Shown piece by piece: positions 5,410 to 44,410 of a stretch of 64,000 nt of DNA. A model generated the notes under the pieces. That model searched no databases and had not been told where the DNA came from. It saw nothing but the letters and a program-made list of their open reading frames with translations. The DNA is from Perna viridis (Eukaryota). Position 1 is the stretch's first letter; each line of letters starts with the position of its first letter. The position numbers and the translations under genes were made by a program. Where the stretch lies: assembly GCA_037379345.1 (NCBI GenBank), contig CM074517.1, forward strand, positions 31,496,001 through 31,560,000, read 5' to 3'.

Positions 5410-5685
5410 TAGCTGGTCGAGTGGTCTATGGCGCTGGACTTTGTCAGATGGTGTTGCCATAGGTGTCACAGCGGTACGAGTAGCTCACGTTATCTTCCCT
5501 GTATCAATTTGATCCGATGGGGCAGTGTAGCGAATAGAGTCGTCACATTATGAGTCGTATACCTGAAAGATGTTAGAACTCAAATTTGCAAAGCAAATGA
5601 ATTTTTCAGACCCTTCTATACTTACATTATCTTCCCTGTATCAATTAAATTGATCCGATGGCGCAGCGTTGCGAATATATAGTCT
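5410..5685 (+). mobile_element. Rearranged copy of the tRNA-cassette direct-repeat element
   Basis: tRNA-like head 5410-5481 matches 15112-15183. The tail CGTTATCTTCCCTGTATCAATTTGATCCGATG occurs twice (about 5488 and 5625). 5569-5599 is the reverse complement of 15210-15242. Confidence 0.8.
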
Positions 5686-8220: not shown

Positions 8221-11200
8221 TAATTCCACTTTCCATAGGCTTCTATGCTAATTTCACAATATTCAATGGCTTCTCTGGACTTTACCTTAACTTTAACCTG
8301 CAGAGGACTATATATCAGCATGATTCTACATATGTCAGCTCACAATCCTCAGAATGGCATGTGGGGTTAGCAGACTTGCAGTGCAGTACTGGTCACCGGA
8401 AGTGAAGGGTCTATAAATAGCATGGGAAATCCCAGTGTTTTCACAAGATAGGGGTATATTTAAAAATCATTATGGAGATTAGGCTTCACATCACAAGAAG
8501 CAAAATGCACCTATAAAATGTACAGAAATGTTTTTCCTTTCAGAAACTGTTTAAATTTTTTAAATAAGATGAGAACTTTTTTCACAGCACTATGAGGAAC
8601 AGGGGTAATTTCTGCGTAGGACTATTTTTGCGTACGTTCCAAATGCTCATTGGTTGAATTGGTGGTCTGTAACCTATAGCGCATTTGATTGTATAAACGT
8701 TCGTTTATGCACATGGGCTTGTTCTCACTAACAAATATGCAGCCCCGCCAGTATAGGTTATATTCTAATGGGACTGCAATTTGATAGTGGGAGCAAGCCT
8801 CTGTGGTTTATGCAATATTTAAAAGTACTGCATCGTTTTTTACAATTGTGAAACAAAGAAGACCCATTTAGGTAAGAAAAAAATGGCGGGAAAAAGAAGA
8901 AGACAGTGGTCAGTTAATTGTTTTATCGCATTTACATTACTTATCGAAAGTTATTAAATCATGGCCAAACATTATGGCAATGATAGTCTGTCCGCCATGT
9001 TTTATTGCTGTCTTTCACACCATGCTGTCCGTTTCAGGTAATATAAATATATCAATTTTAGATATTTACACTTCTTATTAGTTTAAACAATATAAATACC
9101 CTTAATATACCATGTCTGGCGTCATCATATGCCATCATTAGTCTATAATTTCCCCACAGGACTTTATAACCTAGCAATTCTAACCCCAGACCACTTAGAC
9201 CTAGATAATTTGCATAATGTAAATTAACACCTATACCTGAAGATATTTACTTTCAGACAGGTAGCCAATGTCACCCACGTTCATGTTAATTAGGTAACTA
9301 CTTCATTACGTCTATGGCATATGTCATTAGATTCTGGGCCATCTACGATTGTAACAATGTATTTTTCCCTCGATCCATCCGTTAGCTTCTGAAAAGGCAA
9401 AATACACAAAGAAGTTACAAGGGTCTAATTTTCGGACCATTCCATGTATTATATAACATGTAGTCAATTATATAATGTTCATCTTTAGAAATTAAATACT
9501 AAACACACTTGTCTGTCAGTCTGTTTGTCAAAATAAATTGATTGGAAGTACCTATATATCTTTGGTATTAAAACTGCCACTTTTTTATTTATAGACCCGG
9601 GGATTTTTAAGAAACACGACTGCATGCTTCCCGTTTGTGAATAATATCAAAACACACACATTTAAAACAAGTACACTTTGATATTCAGCTACCATAGGGC
9701 CTTTTGTATCCGAAATGATATTTTATTTTTCTGTGGTGACTTAATTTCGAATTGGTATATTTCCAGCTTAGCTTTAGCGAGATGTGTTTTTCCGGTCAAC
9801 TCTTTTCTCCAACCTTGAATTGCTTGATTTCTTCTTGGTTATCGAATACGAACGTAAAAAGAAGGAATATCTTAAAATTATACATAGGATGATACATACA
9901 TGATGAAAATTTTTGGGGGAAGTTGGATATGAACATCTGTACACATTAAATGGACCTTTGGGCACAGCTAAGTTAAATACGTCTAGTAACTGCTTTAAAA
10001 TAAACATGATACAGCAAACTTCGAAATGTAAAACCGATTCGATAGGTTTGTGTACAAAAAAGTGAGTGTTTATTAAAATGCATATATTTTCGTAAAAAAA
10101 ACCTTTTATATCAACATGATCATACGAAAGACGCTGCTGTGCTATATAATAAAGTCGGTATGCTGCAGAAATCAGAATGTAAACTATAACGGCGTTTAAA
10201 TGTCGAATTTAAGTTATTTCAATGGGCTCTATCGTGATGTCCTAATTTCTGTCTTTGTTTTGTTTGGTTTTTTTTGTGCTTAAATGTCTTTCTACTGCGC
10301 CCAAAATTATCACACGCATATTTTTTTTTAATGACAACAAGTGTCAATTGATTGCGATGCTGCGTTGAAACAATGATCTATGAGTGACAAAGAAAGACAA
10401 TATGCACAAACGACCAAAATATACTGTTAACAGCGTATTCAGTATCCAGTATGAAACTCACACACTAAAGCTTACATCTAACAGTATGAAATAAATATTA
10501 CAGTGGGAAAGCTGATGGTCGTAACCGAAAGTAACCATTTAATCATGGCGGGCGCTTCTGTCGGTTAGTGATATTTCTTCATTTTCATGCATTTACCATC
10601 AAACTTTCTGTGAAATAATTGATTGAACCTTCGAATTCTGATCATCATTAACCGTAACACCGGAGTTTCGAAGTTGTACAAACCCACAGAAGTAGTAACT
10701 AAAAAATAAAATGGTCGTATTAAACACATTAAGAAATTGCTAAGTTATTTTAATTCACAACCATACAATAGTTTATATATCTGTAGACGCGTTTTGGAAT
10801 TTTGGACGTAACAGGCTTTTATCAACAAAATCTACTATTTTTTTCTCGAATATTTAATTACACTTTCCCTTGATAAAAACACCGAGGAAAAGAATATTTA
10901 AAAAATAAATCCAAAGTTGTTTTTTGTTGTTGTTGTTTTTGTTTTCTATTTGTTGAACTAAGAGACATACCGAACTTAGAACAGTGTGTTTTAAAATAGA
11001 AATAAAAAAAACAAAAAACAAAGGTCATGCATTTCTGAAAAAAAAAACATCTTCAGTCTCCGATCCATCACTAGATGGCGACTTGATTGACAGTTTATCA
11101 TGTGCCATTATTCTGTATAATTGTATCTTAATGTCCACTTTTAGGTCTACGTATCTTACATATGTCACTTATAATGAACACATTTATACAATTAATACAC

Positions 11201-12000
11201 CGTTTATTCATTTCAGCCTCTCCTTGTCACAAAGTTCTCGTAAAAACGTGGACTGTCCGAGATTTTATGGTGGTCATGTGACAGATTTATTTTTGTTTTT
11301 GTCACATTCGAGTGATCGTGTGATCGATCATTATTTACCATGAACTTCTGTTTTACTGACAAAATGTCACATAATTACAAAACTGAGTCTTGTACAAATC
11401 GTGTATTGAGTGGTAACCTACTTTATGATGTGTTATGGAAGACATAATGAACACGGACAACAGTTCTTCGTGTTTTTATTTCATTTTATTGATTATGGTA
11501 CTCAAGTTTATTTGCTGACTCCGGAATAAAGCTTTTTGCCTATACTTCAAGAAACAAGACGTGTGCTAACCTTTTTAAACATCATATTGAGCAGATATAT
11601 GCCGATGAATTCGAAAAAAATATCGTTCAAATGTATAAAGGTCAACCAAGCATCGATCCACTAACAAGAACATATGGTCAAATATTCCAAGTTTTAACGA
11701 ATAAAGAACGGGAACTAAGTAAAGTCTTGATAAAATAAAATATGAAATAGAACTTGTCAAATTTTCAATGAAAATCATTCTAATTTCAGATTAAAGTCAC
11801 TGCACTAAATGCTGAATATGTCTTTTGCAACTTGATTAAAAAAACTAAACAAAAAAAAAAAAAAAATGTTATATGCATTATATATGAAGGTGTTCACATC
11901 AATTGCTTTAATTAAATATAAACTTATAAAAGTATTATAATTTTACATCTAAGATAAACAGTTTTGACTTTATTGATTTCCAAAGTATATGTGTAGTATA

Positions 12001-12526
12001 TCGCAACTTTTCAACACCGCATCGATTCTAGAGTTGGAGTGTAGCTTTGACTTGATTATATATGTATACATGCATCCTTGTATTAACATACTATGTTGAT
12101 CCTCACCGTGCATGCTATGTATCTACATAGTAATGCACTAACAAGTAACATGGTAGCGTTGCCACATCCCATTAGACTTCTTATATGTATTATATACTTG
12201 GTGTGGCTGTATTTGTATAATGTTGCAGATCGTCTACTATCTAACCCGATACCACCAGAGGTTGCCCTATTCAGTTACATCATGTGCTAATGTTCGCGCT
12301 CTGAATTTACTTACGAGAAAGTATCACTCGGTTAACGAAAGCTGTATTTTTAAAGCCTAGTTGGCCGAGTGGTCTAGAGCGTTGGACATTGCAGGCGGTG
12401 TTGCTATAGATGTCAGAGAGAAGGGGTTCGAATCCCGCTGAGGGAGTAACTATATTTGCATCGCAAATTTGCAACCTTGCATCGGCTCTAGAGTTGGAGT
12501 CAAGCTTAGACTTCATTATATATATA
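12001..12526 (+). mobile_element. Direct-repeat element with internal tRNA-like Pol III cassette, TA-repeat associated (subfamily B)
   Basis: 60-bp direct repeats at 12001-12060 and 12461-12520 (49/60 identical), each running into TA repeats. A-box-like TGGCCGAGTGG at 12362 and B-box GGTTCGAATCC at 12425-12435. Confidence 0.8.
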
Positions 12527-12962
12527 ATATTTGTTTATTTCTAAAGTAAAGGTAAAATTATCGAATAATCTCTACACAAGATATTAATCTTCTGACTCTG
12601 GCATTGAAAAAAAAGAACGGATATTGGGAAACTCAACAAATGCACCAGCGTACAACCTTAATAGAGAATTTTAGATACTTTCAGAGAACACCAAAAAGTC
12701 TTCAAAGCTAGTGTAAACACACCTGTTGTTTGTTGAGGTATTTCATGAAGATAATTGAATGTATTATTGTACAAAATTTTTGATAAGTTTTGTTTTGCGT
12801 GTAACATTTGGCATTTTTCTCAAATATTTGTAATTGGAACTTGTCTTTTCTTAATGTTTGTTCTTTATCCATCAATAATTGTTATTATACATTTTTGTTT
12901 ATTTTTAAAGAGACAATGATAATTAATTCAAGATGAAATATATAAAATTTAGTATCAGTTTG

Positions 12963-13007
12963 ACCATGGAAGTATAATATCTAGTTTAGTCATTATAATT
13001 CCATGGT
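12963..13007. repeat. Short imperfect palindrome (mini foldback)
   Basis: ACCATGGAAGTATAAT...ATTATAATTCCATGGT inverted arms. Confidence 0.6.
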
Positions 13008-14862
13008 TTGACATTGACCATTGTCAACACTTTAATCATTTTGTTCAATTCTTCAAAATATCATTTTAAAAATTATATAAGATGTCAAAGTTTCAGTTTT
13101 CTTGCATTTTCCTAAGGGCACTAATTTGTCTGGAACACAGACACATTAATGTTACACGAGGATTAAGTTTTCAATGTCGAATGGGGCAGTGGGATTAAAA
13201 ACATATTATCTCATGACATGTAATTGAAAAATAGTATTGAAATATGAACATACAAGCAATTAACAAACATAAACTGACAATTAATTACCTACAAATTGTG
13301 ATGAAAATAGTATTTTATCACTCAGTTGGTTATATGAAATTTTCAAAATGACAGAATGACAAAATATAGGGATTAAGTCATCATTTTATTTGCAAGCAAA
13401 TAGTTTTTTGTTATACATTTCCAGTCCCATTATAATGATATACAGAAAAATGTATAGAAAAGGTATGGATTTACAAAAGATAATGGCTGTTTTCTGTCCC
13501 CAAGGAAGACTATGGGAAATAATTTATGTATTTACTGAAATGAATGAACTATTTTAAAAGAAAGGGTTTCCTGTTCCATACATTCAGCATTTAAAACATG
13601 TGATAACAATGAAGAGTTTTCAATTATGTCAAAACGATAGATATGCATTCAAGTGCATATATTGGGTAAATAATGAAAACAAGAGTTGTGAATGGACAAC
13701 CTTGTCTCATCGTTTTTTTTTTTTTTGTTTTTTTTTTGTAAAGGAAGGAATTAACGAATACATATTAATTCAAGTATTTCTTAAATGCTCGAGTTTCAAC
13801 TGAATATTACAGCTAATCAAATGTTCAAAGTAGTTTTTAAATTAAACATTTTTCGTAAACCTTTTTATTTTTGTTTAAAGATATAATAATGGGTTTCGGA
13901 GTGTATCAGGGAAATATTAACATCCCGGACTTTGTGGGAATGTGTTATTATTAATTTATTGAAATAAGAATATATCATTATGACATTCAAACACCACAAA
14001 CTGAAAGAAAATAGATTAGTACATAATAAAGGAATTGTTTCTGAAATCAATTCTCACATTTGTCGAACAGTTACATGACATTCGCGGTAATACATCAGCT
14101 CTGGTCGACATATCAGCTATGACGACACAACTCATAAGGTGCAGTAGTATGGGAAAATTGTAGCTAGCTTTGACAGATCTTAAATCATTTAATGAAACGT
14201 ACAAATTACTAGTGATGGACACTGAATTATGTGACACTAGGTCCTACAATGTTAAGCGTCTTGTAATATTTCGATTAACAACGATTTTACACGATATGCT
14301 CAAGGCCATTAGAGGATGATAATGACGTACTCATGCCTTTATCAGAATGTTTGGTGTTAAAGATAATATCTAATCGACAACATAACTGTTAATCAAGATA
14401 TTCGTCAAAATAGAAATGAGCACTTCGCTTTGTATGATAAAAATATAACTTATGTTTAAAAACGCTACAAAAATATGAATATTTTTCTGTTCACGACAAA
14501 TAGAAACATATTTTGTATAAAACAGTATACTAGTATATTGTGTGTAAACAAGCTTAAACGCATGGATTCGTGGAATCATGTATTCCACTGGTCAGACGTG
14601 AAGTGTTCCTTTTTCAATGATTTATGTAAATAAAAAATCTTTTTATATCTCAACTTAAACCAGTGAGTCATGGGTTGTAATTGAAACAAACTCAACCTTG
14701 TTGATTATCAAAAGCAAAAGCAGCTAGGTTTTAGTATATGTGCCATCAAAAAGACTTTAAAATATAAAGATCGAAGGAGTTACGAAAATGTTGATATGCT
14801 CGACTGAGCAAAATAAATTCGACGAATTGCGTTTATTAGTTGTTTATATATATATATATAAG

Positions 14863-15347
14863 TTTACGTTATCTTCCCTGTATCAATTTGATCCGATGGA
14901 GCAGTGTAGAGGATAGAGTCGTCACATTCTGAGACGTTGTATAATATTGATTTGTTGTGACATGCATCATTAATTTGATCCTCTATCCTAAATAATAACA
15001 CCCAGATGAACTGTCCCGTACTACCATACATCGTGTACTAAGTTACAGCCCTAGATTAATCCTACGAGGAGGAATCACCCGGCCAGCGAAAGCTATATTT
15101 TAATATAGCCTAGCTGGCCGAGTGGTCTAGGGCGCTAGACTTAGTGCAGGCGGTGTTGCCATAGATGTCACAGCGGTACGAGTTCGAGTCCCGCGGAGGG
15201 AACGGCAAACATTTGCTTCGCAAATTTGACAGTTCTAACATCGTTGGGTTTTTTTCAGACCCTTCTATAAATTTACGTTATCTCCCCTGTATCAATTTGA
15301 TCCGATGAAGCAGTGTAGAGAATAGAGTCGTCACATTCTGAGACGTT
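14863..15347 (+). mobile_element. Direct-repeat element with internal tRNA-like Pol III cassette inserted in (TA)n (subfamily A, intact)
   Basis: 76-bp direct repeats at 14863-14938 and 15272-15347 (73/76 identical, period 409), with (TA)n on both flanks. A-box TGGCCGAGTGG at 15115 and B-box GTTCGAGTCC at 15182-15191. Confidence 0.85.
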
Positions 15348-16153
15348 ATATATATATAATTACGGAAAGTTTTGGTAATGCTAGGCTGTTGCGCAATATT
15401 TGTATTGCAGACATGTTAGCGACATGCATTACTAATGATTAAATTGTTAATGCTTCTTTTAGTTATAATTTCTAAGTCAGGCAAACGATTAGATAGGGGT
15501 TTCCAGTGATACACCTTGTAGTTACCTGATTTAAAAAAAATATTTCCCATGGTCAATTTCTGGTATTATATTTTTGTATGTCAGTGTAAAAACTTTCCGA
15601 GTAATGAAAAATAAAAAATGACAGCAAAGCAATTTGCTGTCGTTAAAAACCGTTTATGGTCATTCGGAAAACAATAGAAAGAAATCTTCACACATTTAAT
15701 GTAATCCTTATGAAATATGTTCAGATGTCAATCAAGATTTATGTAGCAATAATAATCAATAACAAATATATACTTGGCACGTTGATCCCTAAAATTGATT
15801 TTGACCGCAATAAAAATGTTCGGTGTCAAACAATCAAGGACATCTTTGCGTAAAACGTAAGATATTTAAAAAAAAATCCCAAAGAAATAGGGAAAAAAAA
15901 CACTTAAAAAAATCCATACGCCACAAAGTTTTTTTTTATCAAATATTCGAGTAACTGAACATAATAAAAACTGCATTTACAGCTTCATTCAACTGTCTCA
16001 ATTTTGTAACTGTATAATATGCAAATATAGTGTGTATGTGTGTGTGTTTGTGTGGTAACACACTTAAGTCGATGTGCCTCCAAAACTGTAAGATTAGGGA
16101 AATTCTCCCAGACCCACGGAGGCTAGAGCTTAAACACAGAGGCCCAGCCGATT

Positions 16154-16291
16154 TTAGGACATACTCAGATCGAGTTCTTCAGTCCGGTATCCCGATGACT
16201 GGGCTCCGCCACCAACATCTGTTGATTCATTAGTAACAGCAGCTTCTAACAGAATTCCCACCAGGATAGTCAAAAGAGAAAAAATCACCAT
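16154..16291 (-). CDS. Candidate 45-aa secreted micropeptide or signal-peptide exon (MVIFSLLTILVGILLEAAVTNESTDVGGGAQSSGYRTEELDLSMS)
   Basis: Acceptor TTTTTTTCAGCAG 16-19 nt upstream, ATG in AAAATGG context, hydrophobic 20-aa N-terminus, and GC-richer than its flanks. Too short for the ORF track; no homology recognised. Confidence 0.4.
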   Translation of the reverse strand: MVIFSLLTILVGILLEAAVTNESTDVGGGAQSSGYRTEELDLSMS

Positions 16292-16719
16292 TTTAATGAA
16301 GTTTAATCTGCTGAAAAAAATACACAGTAGGTAATTGAATGGTTTTGAGTGTAAGTTTTTAGTTTTGTCATTTTAAGTGTACACATGGCGCAAATCAAAA
16401 AATGATCATAATTAATCTAAAAATATTAATACCTAGTGATTCTTTTGAAGGCCTTGAAATCATGTAACAACAAGCTGAAGTACATGTGATTTCATTTTTA
16501 ACAAAACGCTAATAATACGTACAGTTTTGGTATTTTTCAATTTAAGATACTCTTAATTTTGGTTATTTTTAATGTATTCAAACTTATATTTACGACAAAA
16601 TTGCTGGCCTTACACATTTCATTAATTATTCGGAATTTCTTTTTGGAGAATATATGCATGCACATGCATGCACATGTTCAGTAGTTGTTAAACATTGAGA
16701 TAAGCTTATTTCTGGTTAG

Positions 16720-42880: not shown

Positions 42881-43804
42881 TCAACTCATCAACCTCATGA
42901 CCGCTATCATAATTGCCGCACAAGACACAACAGTTCCAAGACAAGTTCTTATAACATCATTTCTATATTGTTCATAGATAGTTTTCAAGTTTGCAACATC
43001 AGTGTCAATTTTATTTCTTATCATCTGTAATTGTTTCTCATTATTTGCATGAGCTTCAGTAGCTCGACTTCTTTCTAAGTTCACATCAAGTTTAACATGT
43101 CCTTGAAGCTTCGAAATTTCATCACTAATGTAAGTCTTAATTTGCTTGATTTCAGCAGTTTGCTTTTCATTTTCATTTCTCAACATTGTGAATTCGCTCT
43201 TTTCAAGAATGACCATGTCCTTCTTCACAGTTGCTATTTGTGCCAATAATTGTTGCACCATTATTTCTTGCTCTGGCTTTGTCACCATATTTTTTGTTTG
43301 ATGTTCAATTGAAGTGTTCAGGACTTCAACAAATGCTTCGACCATGCACACAGCTTGTTCTCGTGTAAGTCCAGCATCATTAAACTTATTGGCAAGGGTC
43401 AGTGTATCGAAGTAAAACATTTTGACTTCTTTTGTTGCGGCTGGGTTAATGGATCTCCATGCTTCATCAGATTTTATTTTTTCAGTGTTAGGCGGCATAA
43501 TTACAATGTCAATGGGCTTTTCAGTGACTGGTGCATTTTTTGTTTTTGAAGATGTCGCTGGTGTTGTAATTGGACTCTTAGATAAAGTCAAATTTTCACT
43601 TACTTTACTATCTAAAATCCCAGACGATTCATGACAATATAGTCTTTTTAAAGTTCTGAAAGTACTTTGAAGTGCACCAATGTCATAATCATAGGAAGTC
43701 TGATGCAACCGATTGTGAAGAGAACGTTTTGTCCCCTTACCTAAAAACTGCCTTGTTAGATTACACGTTTTTGTCACAAGTTGATATGGTGTAATTCCAT
43801 TCAT
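42881..43804 (-). CDS. MCUR1: MCUR1/CCDC90-family mitochondrial coiled-coil protein (DUF1640), 307 aa
   Basis: FYFDTLTL..F..AGLTREQA, KKDMVILEKSEF..LRNENEK, KLDVNLERSR and KIDTDVANLKT motifs, plus a C-terminal TM helix and a basic transit-peptide-like N-terminus. First ATG at 43804; acceptor TTTCAG at 43908 suggests a 5'UTR intron. MCUR1 versus CCDC90B not resolvable. Confidence 0.92.
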   Translation of the reverse strand: MNGITPYQLVTKTCNLTRQFLGKGTKRSLHNRLHQTSYDYDIGALQSTFRTLKRLYCHESSGILDSKVSENLTLSKSPITTPATSSKTKNAPVTEKPIDIVIMPPNTEKIKSDEAWRSINPAATKEVKMFYFDTLTLANKFNDAGLTREQAVCMVEAFVEVLNTSIEHQTKNMVTKPEQEIMVQQLLAQIATVKKDMVILEKSEFTMLRNENEKQTAEIKQIKTYISDEISKLQGHVKLDVNLERSRATEAHANNEKQLQMIRNKIDTDVANLKTIYEQYRNDVIRTCLGTVVSCAAIMIAVMRLMS

Positions 43805-44007
43805 TTTATCGTTTTTTTTTAAGCCAAACGATAATCTTATACAAGCATTTGCAGTTTTGTGACAACGGTAGCAGACTGCAGACACAACACATTTACAGCT
43901 GATTGATCTGAAACTGTAGTTGAAATAAGAGGGATAGCTTGTGGTATTAAACAGGTAACCAGTTAAAAAAAACAGTATGCCATTTCGTAACTGTCCGCTG
44001 AAATCCG

Positions 44008-44410
44008 GAGTAATCAATGGAAGGGAAAACAATATTCTAGCGGAAATCAAAAGAATGTAATCCAGTGACAAAGACCAGACATGGAAACAGGCACATACAA
44101 CAAAATAACCAAGATAGTACGTACAAAGCTATAAAAGTATATGAGCAACTCGGACTCCATTAAAAACTGTGAGCGTCGACCAGGTGTACCGGTAGGGTAA
44201 GCGTCCTCTGCTTTTCTAAAAATACCAAAGTCAAGTCCGGGGTAGACGAAAGAGGAAATGAAAACTATGACACATTGAACAAATAAGTTTTCATGGTGCA
44301 GATGAATAAATACACCGTAACGATCCACGAGTTCACGATGACGACCATAAAACTTCCTAAGTGATGACTTCAATCTTGTGGCGAAATAACCCTTGTTCCA
44401 TAAGCCTAAT
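44008..44410 (-). mobile_element. Penelope-like RT C-terminus and 3' UTR remnant
   Basis: LWNKGYFATRLKSSLRKFYGRHRELVDRYGV followed by AGAAAAGCAGAGGACGCTTACCCTACCGGTACACCTGGTC. Confidence 0.8.

What the first reader, a model, noticed from the sequence alone, without database searches (positions are those of the whole stretch)
14863..15347. (TA)n-associated direct-repeat elements with an internal tRNA-like promoter: a circularly permuted SINE, possibly mobilised by Penelope-like elements
Seen: two diverged subfamilies (14863-15347 and 12001-12526) share one layout: tail repeat, 170-300 bp spacer, tRNA-like A/B-box cassette, tail repeat, (TA)n. The tails are different sequences but the architecture is the same. 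Established: ordinary SINEs start at the tRNA head, and an internal Pol III promoter cannot transcribe DNA upstream of itself; Penelope-like elements (PLEs) make partial tandem pseudo-LTRs and some target microsatellites. Inference: the unit (409 and 460 bp) is copied from a tandem or circular RNA template by a PLE-type RT, giving slightly-more-than-unit-length insertions. The left junction TATAAGTTTACG mirrors the internal CTATAAATTTACG, consistent with microhomology priming at TA. I cannot say whether repeat libraries already hold this family.
Basis: partly seen in the sequence, partly recalled or inferred. Interest (0 to 1): 0.78.

Follow-up and report, generated by a model that had tools for sequence, protein, structure and literature searches.

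The report
tRNA-box parasite of Penelope-like retrotransposons
Two neighbouring repeats belong to abundant non-coding mobile elements that carry a tRNA-type promoter cassette, insert at TA microsatellites the way Penelope-like retrotransposons do, and end in the same short signal as those retrotransposons in this genome, so they are most likely their parasites and not ordinary SINEs.

Summary
Window 14857-15352 (family A: 409-bp unit plus an 87-bp terminal repeat) and 12000-12526 (family B: 460 bp plus 67 bp) have the same layout, and both sit between TA runs.

Each family has well over 1,000 copies in the genome. A copies are about 95% alike; B copies are 80-88% alike and therefore older.

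In 51 independent A loci:
- The 3' end is fixed at one of two sites 87 nt apart.
- The 5' end falls at any phase, giving insertions of 0.5 to 2.7 tandem units.
- About half carry a head-to-head inverted arm whose own 3' end faces outward onto a TA run.

This is the published geometry of Penelope-like elements (PLEs).

The motif AGAC-N0-2-TT-N0-2-TATA marks both A end sites, the X terminus and both X2 end sites (also 87 nt apart). A slightly looser form marks the B end. The motif has no match in 124 kb of the rest of the window.

No hammerhead or other Rfam ribozyme was found, and no discrete RNA ends. A circular RNA was not testable.

The scan had already found family A on other DNA of this genome. 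My verdict is a new variant of a known kind: a ribozyme-less, non-autonomous PLE with a Pol III-type cassette.

The parts
14845..14860 (.). 5' flanking (TA)n run of the A insertion
   Evidence: Read directly. The same junction, (TA)n-TATAAG|TTTACG, is seen at another locus, L024.
14857..15352 (+). Family A insertion: one 409-bp unit plus an 87-bp repeated tail (pseudo-LTR form)
   Evidence: family D1. At least 2188 candidate places in the genome, with the best 40 at 93-96% identity.
14857..14943 (+). 5' copy of the tail (pseudo-LTR), the segment lying between the two 3'-end sites
   Evidence: The two 3'-end classes at unit positions about 407 and about 85 bracket exactly this segment.
14932..14947 (+). 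Internal copy of the terminal motif AGACGTTGTATAA ('site 85')
   Evidence: Motif scan, unit position 70. It lies at the apex of a predicted 80-nt hairpin at 14910-14989, z = -2.7; this structure carries low weight.
15027..15106 (+). Conserved leader upstream of the tRNA-like cassette, shared with family B
   Evidence: A/B alignment. The leader pairs with the 5' half of the tRNA-like part; 4 pairs covary between A and B.
15107..15201 (+). tRNA-derived Pol III-type cassette (A box 15115-15125, B box 15182-15191)
   Evidence: Pattern search gives 2 hits against 0 expected. Not recognised as a tRNA by ARAGORN or Rfam.
15249..15255 (+). T7 run (T5 in the family majority), a Pol III terminator-like signal lying between the cassette and the tail
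   Evidence: RNA reads show T>A at 15249 and 15250 in nearly all family reads (table 3).
15257..15270 (+). Terminal motif AGACCCTTCTATAA ('site 407'), the alternative 3' end of family A
   Evidence: Motif scan, unit position 395. Arrays and inverted arms ending here on TA runs include L006, L007, L025, L028, L039, L043 and L058.
15266..15352 (+). 3' copy of the tail, ending GAGACGTT|ATATA (main 3' end, 'site 85')
   Evidence: The 3' end lies at unit position 75-89 in 41 of 51 loci, or 43 counting two (TG)n-flanked copies that read to position 97.
15348..15358 (.). 3' flanking (TA)n run
12000..12526 (+). Family B insertion: one 460-bp unit plus a 67-bp repeated tail. This is the older subfamily.
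   Evidence: family D2. At least 1688 candidate places at 80-88% identity, with upstream partial tandems and inverted pieces at many loci.
12276..12445 (+). B copy of the shared core: leader plus tRNA-type cassette (pattern match 12362-12435)
12506..12527 (+). B terminal motif TTAGACTTCAT followed by (TA)n
   Evidence: The best local alignment to the 3' end of PLE X2 falls exactly here. The spacer before TATA is 3 nt, so it falls just outside the regex used.
12174..12185 (+). Second, internal motif copy in B (AGACTTCTTATA)
   Evidence: Whether B copies end here was not tested.
5410..5677 (+). Decayed, internally deleted A-related copy (tRNA-head part joined to the tail, then a short unit and the tail again)
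   Evidence: BLAST of unit A against the window, 82-93% identity; sequence read.

Best explanation
A and B are two subfamilies of a non-coding, non-autonomous retroelement. It is copied by the reverse transcriptase and GIY-YIG endonuclease of Penelope-like elements (PLEs) resident in the same genome.

Proposed mechanism:
1. An RNA spanning more than one unit is the template. It is transcribed from a tandem genomic copy. Whether the internal tRNA-type Pol III cassette or read-through transcription makes it is unknown.
2. The PLE enzyme nicks a TA microsatellite.
3. Reverse transcription starts inside the RNA at either of two sites that carry the signal AGAC..TT..TATA. The UAUA there can pair with the nicked TA run.
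4. Synthesis runs a variable distance towards the 5' end, which gives 0.5 to 2.7 tandem units.
5. Often both DNA strands are primed, which gives head-to-head arms whose 3' ends face outward.

It appears twice because the insertion is longer than one unit, which makes it a pseudo-LTR.

Shown here: the geometry, the TA association, the motif, and the co-resident PLEs with the same geometry. Inferred: the enzyme, the template form and the polymerase.
For: (1) Ends. In 51 independent A loci the direct arm ends at unit position 75-89 next to TA in 41 (43 counting two (TG)n-flanked copies that read to position 97). It ends at about 407 in 5. The 5' ends fall at all phases, and arrays hold up to 2.7 units.

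(2) Inverted arms. About 27 of 51 loci have an inverted arm abutting the 5' end. The outer end of that arm is again about 407 (about 13 loci) or about 85 (about 5 loci), and in about 15 loci it abuts a TA run.

(3) Match to published PLE behaviour. PLEs make pseudo-LTRs and tandem/inverted insertions. Some clades target (TA)n and lack hammerheads (PMC8557442). A purified PLE cleaves and extends both strands and starts reverse transcription at two internal sites on multi-copy RNA, which produces an optional 'tail' (PMC11167929).

(4) Co-resident PLEs.
- Family X (L027:1991-3483, minus strand) and family X2 (L059 ORF 608-1066) encode GIY-YIG endonucleases. Pfam gives 9e-6 for X2. X and X2 are 50% identical, E 2e-47. 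The Atlas places X in GIY-YIG/HTH_animal clusters.
- X has at least 2920 candidate copies. These are 5'-truncated with a fixed 3' end, include head-to-head pairs, and one has an 843-aa open frame.
- X or X2 3' ends lie tail-to-tail with A copies across the same TA run in L005, L007, L027, L051, L053, L056, L059 and L060.

(5) Motif. AGAC-N0-2-TT-N0-2-TATA occurs in unit A only at positions 70 and 395, which are the two end classes. It occurs once in 1.5 kb of X, at the terminus. It occurs twice in X2, 87 nt apart, and X2 copies end at either site: L007 and L051 at one, L059 and L022 at the other. It has 0 hits in 124.5 kb of other window sequence on both strands. The B tail ends TTAGACTTCAT-TATATA.

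(6) Family B shows the same partial tandems and inverted pieces.

(7) TA as target. Seven of about 20 simple insertions have TA runs on both sides, which points to TA being a pre-existing target.
Against: - Beyond the 13-17-nt terminal motif, the A and B tails show no significant similarity to the X or X2 3' UTRs (z about 0). No autonomous element with a matching tail was identified.
Other PLE families, and the copy with the 843-aa frame, could not be read.
- The reverse transcriptase domain of X/X2 was not seen directly; only the endonuclease-side part of the ORF was.
- A T5-T7 run lies between the Pol III cassette and the tail, so a Pol III transcript from the cassette should stop before site 85.
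- RNA-seq shows family reads on both strands and no discrete starts or ends.
- Part of each TA run could be added during integration and not be target; no empty site was examined.
Confidence: 0.8

Rival explanations
1. Same enzyme, different template. Unit-length RNA is circularised, as in a ribozyme-less retrozyme, and PLE reverse transcriptase rolls around the circle. That would produce seamless multimers of any length.
For: Arrays are seamless (408 joins to 1) and begin at any phase. The unit RNA is unusually structured, z = -5.5, like retrozyme circles (PMC7761336). Circular templates were proposed for PLE more-than-unit copies (PMC4209133).
Against: No hammerhead or any Rfam ribozyme was found, and my own minimal-hammerhead descriptor gave no hit. 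No known route would cut and ligate this RNA. Genomic tandem copies exist that could give linear multi-unit RNA, which is the published PLE model. The window copy already contains every junction a circle would have, so RNA-seq cannot separate the two forms.
Confidence: 0.12
2. An ordinary tRNA-derived SINE mobilised by a LINE with a (TA)n-type 3' end. Tandems would arise from tandem master copies and inverted pieces from twin priming.
For: A fixed 3' end, 5' truncation and 5' inversions also occur with LINE machinery. An A/B-box cassette is present. There is a modest excess of 5' ends near the tRNA head, 8 of 51 within positions 234-252.
Against: The conserved unit extends 245 nt upstream of the head in all copies. 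The inverted arms carry the element's own 3' ends outward, which is not the upstream-segment pattern of twin priming. There are two alternative 3' ends 87 nt apart, as in PLE X2. The terminal motif is shared with GIY-YIG elements. No LINE-like tail was seen, but LINE 3' ends were not surveyed.
Confidence: 0.05
3. A tRNA-bearing miniature LTR retrotransposon (Helenus-type TRIM), whose tandem LTR-internal-LTR arrays arise by recombination.
For: Terminal direct repeats plus a tRNA-like sequence. Helenus families occur in several animal groups and sometimes form tandem arrays (PMC10886601).
Against: The tRNA-like part is not inside the terminal repeat. There is no TGG-type primer-binding site after the 5' repeat and no polypurine tract before the 3' repeat. 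No 4-5-bp target duplications are seen. The 5' ends vary and head-to-head arms are present.
Confidence: 0.01
4. A DNA-level process: Helitron-like rolling-circle transposition, or dispersal of a satellite through extrachromosomal circles.
For: Insertion next to TA, no target duplication, tandem copies.
Against: Rolling-circle elements vary at the 3' end, not the 5' end. No 5' TC or 3' CTRR ends are present. Arms with 3' ends facing outward and a motif shared with retroelements point to reverse transcription.
Confidence: 0.02

Closest known systems
Non-autonomous Penelope-like elements, for example MRC1 and other non-autonomous Chlamys elements of Chlamydomonas (PMC8557442), and short non-autonomous Penelope elements of Heliconius butterflies (PMC6685494)
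   Same: Non-coding. They form pseudo-LTRs and multi-copy head-to-tail insertions, prefer microsatellites, and resemble autonomous PLEs at the 3' end.
   Different: Here the 3' resemblance is only a 13-17-nt terminal motif. The element also carries a tRNA-type A/B-box cassette with a conserved leader, which the papers I could search do not report for non-autonomous PLEs.
Metazoan non-LTR retrozymes (PMC7761336; bioRxiv 10.64898/2026.07.22.740005) and the SMalpha SINE-like hammerhead repeats of Schistosoma (cited in PMC8490949)
   Same: Small (150-400 bp), highly structured, tandemly inserted non-coding repeats regarded as PLE dependants.
   Different: Retrozymes are defined by a hammerhead ribozyme and are said to lack promoters. 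This family has no ribozyme by three searches and has a Pol III-type cassette. That SMalpha also has tRNA-like promoter boxes is from my memory of Ferbeyre et al. 1998, which I could not read.
Autonomous endonuclease-bearing PLEs: Naiad and Neptune-type clades (PMC8557442) and the Anolis Poseidon element PAc (PMC11167929)
   Same: (TA)n or AT-rich targets, tandem and inverted insertions, two internal reverse-transcription start sites giving an optional 'tail', and both strands extended.
   Different: A and B encode nothing. [quoted passage not shown]
Canonical tRNA-derived SINEs of molluscs and other animals (PMC4758252)
   Same: A tRNA-derived A/B-box region, high copy number and no coding capacity.
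   Different: The head is not the 5' end of the element. The tail is not LINE-like. No target duplications are seen. Insertions are partial tandems with inverted arms.
TRIMp3 elements (Helenus, Ajax, Cassandra): LTR-type non-autonomous elements with Pol III promoters (PMC10886601)
   Same: The same idea, a small-RNA promoter recruited by a non-autonomous retroelement of a class other than LINE-dependent SINEs.
   Different: A different class of machinery. No primer-binding site, polypurine tract, true LTRs or fixed duplications are present.

Membership tests
Non-autonomous Penelope-like element | Partial-tandem insertions giving pseudo-LTRs, with a fixed 3' end and a variable 5' end | tested here: met
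   51 loci: 3' end at unit position about 85 or about 407, 5' end at any phase, 0.5-2.7 units. Family B shows the same.
Non-autonomous Penelope-like element | Complex inverted (head-to-head) insertions | tested here: met
   About 27 of 51 loci have an inverted arm with its own 3' end facing outward. PLE X shows the same pairs, as does the PLE in L053.
Non-autonomous Penelope-like element | Optional 'tail' from two alternative 3' ends (two reverse-transcription start sites) | tested here: met
   End classes at about 407 and about 85, 87 nt apart, each on the motif. PLE X2 has the same two-site arrangement.
Non-autonomous Penelope-like element | 3' end similar to that of an autonomous PLE in the same genome | tested here: inconclusive
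   The terminal motif AGAC..TT..TATA is shared with X and X2, with 0 background hits in 124.5 kb. The tails do not align beyond it. Other PLE families could not be fetched.
Non-autonomous Penelope-like element | Autonomous reverse-transcriptase/GIY-YIG elements present, with the same target preference | tested here: met
   GIY-YIG ORFs X and X2. At least 2920 X candidates, one with an 843-aa open frame. Tail-to-tail sharing of TA runs. The reverse transcriptase domain itself was not read.
Non-autonomous Penelope-like element | Actual mobilisation by PLE protein | not testable with these tools
   Needs a retrotransposition or in vitro TPRT assay.
Non-LTR retrozyme | Hammerhead (or other self-cleaving) ribozyme in each unit | tested here: not met
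   No Rfam hit at E<=1 or at gathering score in 97 kb including the PLE loci. Minimal-hammerhead descriptor: 0 hits in A and B dimers, both strands.
Non-LTR retrozyme | Accumulates as circular RNA | not testable with these tools
   RNA-seq cannot distinguish a circle from a tandem here.
Canonical LINE-dependent tRNA SINE | The element starts at the tRNA-derived head | tested here: not met
   Conserved sequence extends 245 nt upstream of the head. Only about 8 of 51 copies start within 10 nt of it.
Canonical LINE-dependent tRNA SINE | Recognisable tRNA-related region with A and B boxes | tested here: met
   The box pattern hits only the two elements, 0 expected. It is not a tRNA by ARAGORN or Rfam.
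Canonical LINE-dependent tRNA SINE | Tail shared with a partner LINE; variable-length target-site duplications | not tested
   LINE 3' ends were not surveyed. Duplications cannot be discerned inside TA runs.
Helenus-type TRIM (TRIMp3) | tRNA-like sequence inside true LTRs; primer-binding site and polypurine tract; 4-5-bp target duplication | tested here: not met
   The tRNA-like part is single and internal. The sequence after the 5' repeat (GTATAATATTG...) and before the 3' repeat (..TCAGACCCTTC) is neither a primer-binding site nor a polypurine tract. The 5' ends vary.

The most novel reading that the evidence does not exclude
The tRNA-type cassette with its covarying leader may be more than a promoter. 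It could be the functional replacement for the hammerhead of retrozymes, recruiting Pol III and tRNA-processing enzymes to produce defined, stable (possibly circular) template RNAs. The AGAC..TT..UAUA signal may be a general initiation signal for reverse transcription that any RNA can acquire to hijack TA-targeting PLEs. That would make this the first Pol III 'SINE class' for the third major retrotransposon class, and it would give a defined minimal cis-signal for PLE reverse transcription.
Probability: 0.2. Interest if true: 0.8.

Novelty: new variant of a known kind. Interest (0 to 1): 0.6.

Why it matters
LINEs have SINEs, and LTR elements have TRIMs, including Pol III-promoter forms. For Penelope-like elements, the only dependants I found in the searchable literature are hammerhead retrozymes and a few deletion derivatives.

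A high-copy, ribozyme-less dependant with a tRNA-type cassette would show that PLEs also support SINE-like parasites.

The short terminal motif, shared by two dependants and two autonomous families and lying exactly at two alternative end sites, gives a concrete candidate for the cis-signal of PLE reverse-transcription initiation. Biochemistry has so far mapped such a signal in only one vertebrate element.

There is also a practical consequence. These copies look like short LTR elements or satellites to annotation pipelines, as happened with MRC1.

Tried and rejected
- Ribozymes: Rfam on the region at E<=1, Rfam at gathering score on the window plus 10 loci, and my own minimal-hammerhead descriptor including the U3-A8 variant. 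All negative.
- tRNA callers: ARAGORN found none in the whole window.
- Tandem Repeats Finder found nothing at 11000-16500, because the elements hold only about 1.2 units.
- Extended tail homology: local and global alignments of the A and B tails against the X and X2 3' UTRs show only the terminal motif.
- Same-species PLE DNA through the protein word search: only 7 distant hits at 32-72% identity, so this route was dropped.
- RNA-seq (3 raw-read runs plus one contig run): family reads on both strands at depth 100-500, flanks at zero, no pile-ups of starts or ends. It gives no evidence on polymerase, strand or circles.
- A sharp 5'-end peak at the tRNA head: only a broad excess at positions 200-300, confounded by how the loci were sampled.
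I did not try another tool for it, so the PLE with the 843-aa frame and further B copies were not read.
- Ferbeyre et al. 1998 is not held.
- Repbase and Dfam cannot be searched here.
- The organism is coded and I did not identify it.

Full report
**1. What is in the window**

- Element A (14857-15352) is a 409-bp unit followed by a second copy of its first 87 nt, at 94% identity.
- Element B (12000-12526) is a 460-bp unit followed by a second copy of its first 67 nt, at 82% identity.
- Both lie between TA runs.
- A combined A-box/B-box pattern matches only these two places in 64 kb, with none expected by chance.
- Neither ARAGORN nor Rfam accepts the region as a tRNA.
- The two elements share one core of 176-205 nt at about 78% identity. 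It starts about 80 nt upstream of the tRNA-like head. Their tails do not align.
- A third, decayed and internally deleted A-like copy lies at 5410-5677.

**2. Both are large families**

The genome is 723 Mb in 46 contigs. The window is C7:31496001-31560000.

- The A element has at least 2188 candidate places; the best 40 are 93-96% identical.
- The B element has at least 1688 candidate places at 80-88% identity, so it is the older family.
After removing overlaps they give 51 independent A insertions.

**3. Geometry of the insertions**

- The 3' end of the direct arm is fixed. It lies at unit position 75-89 (..GAGACGTT, then G/A-TATATA) in 41 of 51 loci, or 43 counting two (TG)n-flanked copies that read to position 97. 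It lies at about 407 (..CCCTTCTATA, then TATA) in 5, and elsewhere in 3.
- The 5' end falls at every phase of the unit. Insertions run from 196 bp to about 1.1 kb (0.5 to 2.7 seamless tandem units).
- The window's 'one unit plus tail' form recurs (L024), but it is one point on this continuum.
- About 27 of 51 loci have an inverted partial copy abutting the 5' end. The outer end of that arm is again position about 407 (about 13 loci) or about 85 (about 5 loci). In about 15 loci it abuts a TA run.
- The commonest composite is therefore: (TA)n | inverted arm | direct arm | (TA)n, with both 3' ends facing outward.
- Seven of about 20 simple insertions have TA runs on both sides. This argues that TA runs are targets and not only tails.
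- Only about 8 of 51 copies begin within 10 nt of the tRNA head. No ordinary target duplications are visible.
- The coordinates show the same upstream partial tandems and inverted pieces for family B.

**4. How this compares with published Penelope-like elements**

- Craig et al. 2021 (PMC8557442) describe pseudo-LTRs, complex tandem/inverted insertions and a microsatellite bias. The Naiad clade prefers (TA)n and lacks hammerheads. They also describe non-autonomous Chlamys elements such as MRC1, which form pseudo-LTRs and multi-copy insertions and resemble autonomous elements at the 3' end.
- Frangieh et al. 2024 (PMC11167929) show a purified PLE that nicks AT-rich DNA, extends both strands, and starts reverse transcription at two sites inside a multi-copy RNA. 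This explains the optional 'tail' seen in genomic copies.
- Each of these features has a counterpart in the A family.

- Beyond the TA run at the 3' end of several A copies lies, in inverted orientation, the 3' end of a protein-coding repeat.
- Family X (L027:1991-3483, minus strand; also in L005, L053, L056, L060) has an ORF ending in a Cys-rich CxxC..CxxC linker and a GIY-YIG-type core.
- Family X2 (L059, ORF 608-1066; 3' ends also in L007, L022, L051) matches Pfam GIY-YIG at 9e-6. It is 50% identical to X, E 2e-47.
- Relatives of X carry GIY-YIG and HTH_animal domains.
- X has at least 2920 candidate copies. They are mostly 5'-truncated with a fixed C-terminal end, include head-to-head pairs, and one has an 843-aa open frame.
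- L053 holds a PLE with an inverted 3' arm on a TA run followed by a direct arm. This is the same composite seen for A.
- I did not read a reverse transcriptase domain directly.

**6. A shared terminal signal**

The motif AGAC-N0-2-TT-N0-2-TATA occurs as follows:

| Sequence | Where the motif occurs |
|---|---|
| Unit A | Only at positions 70 and 395, the two observed 3'-end classes |
| 1.5 kb of X | Once, at the terminus |
| X2 | Twice, 87 nt apart; copies end at either site (L007 and L051 at one, L059 and L022 at the other) |
| B | Once internally (12174) |
| Remaining 124.5 kb of the window, both strands | No hits |

The B tail ends TTAGACTTCAT-TATATA, one base outside the regex. The best local alignment of every tail pair falls on this terminus. 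Beyond the motif the tails are unrelated, so X and X2 are not shown to be the specific partners.

Both A sites sit on TATAA, which can pair with a nicked TA run. It differs from the non-homologous initiation reported for the Anolis element.

**7. RNA**

- The unit folds much better than shuffles, z = -5.5.
- The conserved leader pairs with the 5' half of the tRNA-like part, with four covarying pairs between A and B. That is only two lineages, so the evidence is weak.
- Site 85 lies at the apex of a predicted hairpin, z = -2.7.
- No hammerhead or other Rfam ribozyme is present.
- Three raw RNA-seq runs of the same (coded) species give family-wide depth of 100-500 on both strands, zero in the unique flanks, and no discrete starts or ends.
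- Nearly all reads carry A in place of T at 15249 and 15250. The family therefore has a T5 run where this copy has T7. Either is a Pol III terminator-like signal between the cassette and the tail.
- Which polymerase makes the template, and whether circles exist, remains open.

**8. Rivals**

- A LINE-dependent SINE is unlikely, given the upstream conserved sequence, the arms with outward 3' ends, the dual ends and the motif shared with GIY-YIG elements. LINE tails were not surveyed.
- A Helenus-type TRIM (PMC10886601) fails on tRNA position, primer-binding site, polypurine tract, target duplications and fixed ends.
- Helitron-like or satellite explanations predict variation at the wrong end.
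- A circular template is a variant of the main reading. It is neither needed nor excluded.

**9. Novelty**

- Non-autonomous PLEs and retrozymes are known.
- Five literature searches found no description of a PLE dependant with a tRNA-type Pol III cassette and no ribozyme.
- Retrozymes are stated to lack promoters.
- Repbase and Dfam could not be checked.
- The scan's own earlier notes reached the same 'Penelope-style, no ribozyme' reading for family A on other DNA of this genome. I tested that reading independently here.
- What I add is family B, the co-resident PLE families, the dual 3' ends and the shared motif.

**Verdict:** a new variant of a known kind. Confidence in PLE-type mobilisation is about 0.8. 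Interest is 0.6.

Noticed in passing
window 15027-15126 and 12276-12375: The conserved leader pairs with the A-box half of the tRNA-like sequence (CGGCCAGC/GCTGGCCG in A, CGGTTAAC/GTTGGCCG in B). Four pairs covary between the two families. This fold competes with a cloverleaf.
   Followed up: partly
window 5410-5677: Decayed A-related copy. It starts at the tRNA head (unit position 249), jumps from about 321 to the tail, then continues with a short unit of about 155 bp and the tail again. It may be a deletion-derivative subfamily.
   Followed up: partly
RNA reads laid on window 15204 joined to 12454 (table 5c): Many reads continue from an A-like tRNA region through 'ACCAAAA' into a B-like tail start. 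At least one further subfamily therefore combines an A-type head with a B-type tail, suggesting modular exchange of tails.
   Followed up: no
G000 C10:39.72-39.93 Mb (includes L027): Eight or more copies of PLE X, most at 98% identity with identical truncation (query 21-257), spaced about 14-48 kb apart. This looks like a large tandem segmental duplication carrying the element, not independent insertions.
   Followed up: no
G000 C1:67575724-67576482 (minus strand): A PLE X copy, 92% identical to the query, lies inside an 843-aa open frame. It is a candidate intact autonomous element.
   Followed up: no
L059:1390-1480 (PLE X2 3' UTR): The 87-nt segment between the two X2 end sites and the A tail are of almost equal length. 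They share an isolated 8-mer (GATCCGAT) at a similar offset, but the overall alignment is not significant.
   Followed up: yes
window 42881-44071 (minus strand): A 396-aa open frame with a strong CCDC90-like domain match (1e-47), a host gene exon. The elements studied lie about 27 kb away from it.
   Followed up: no
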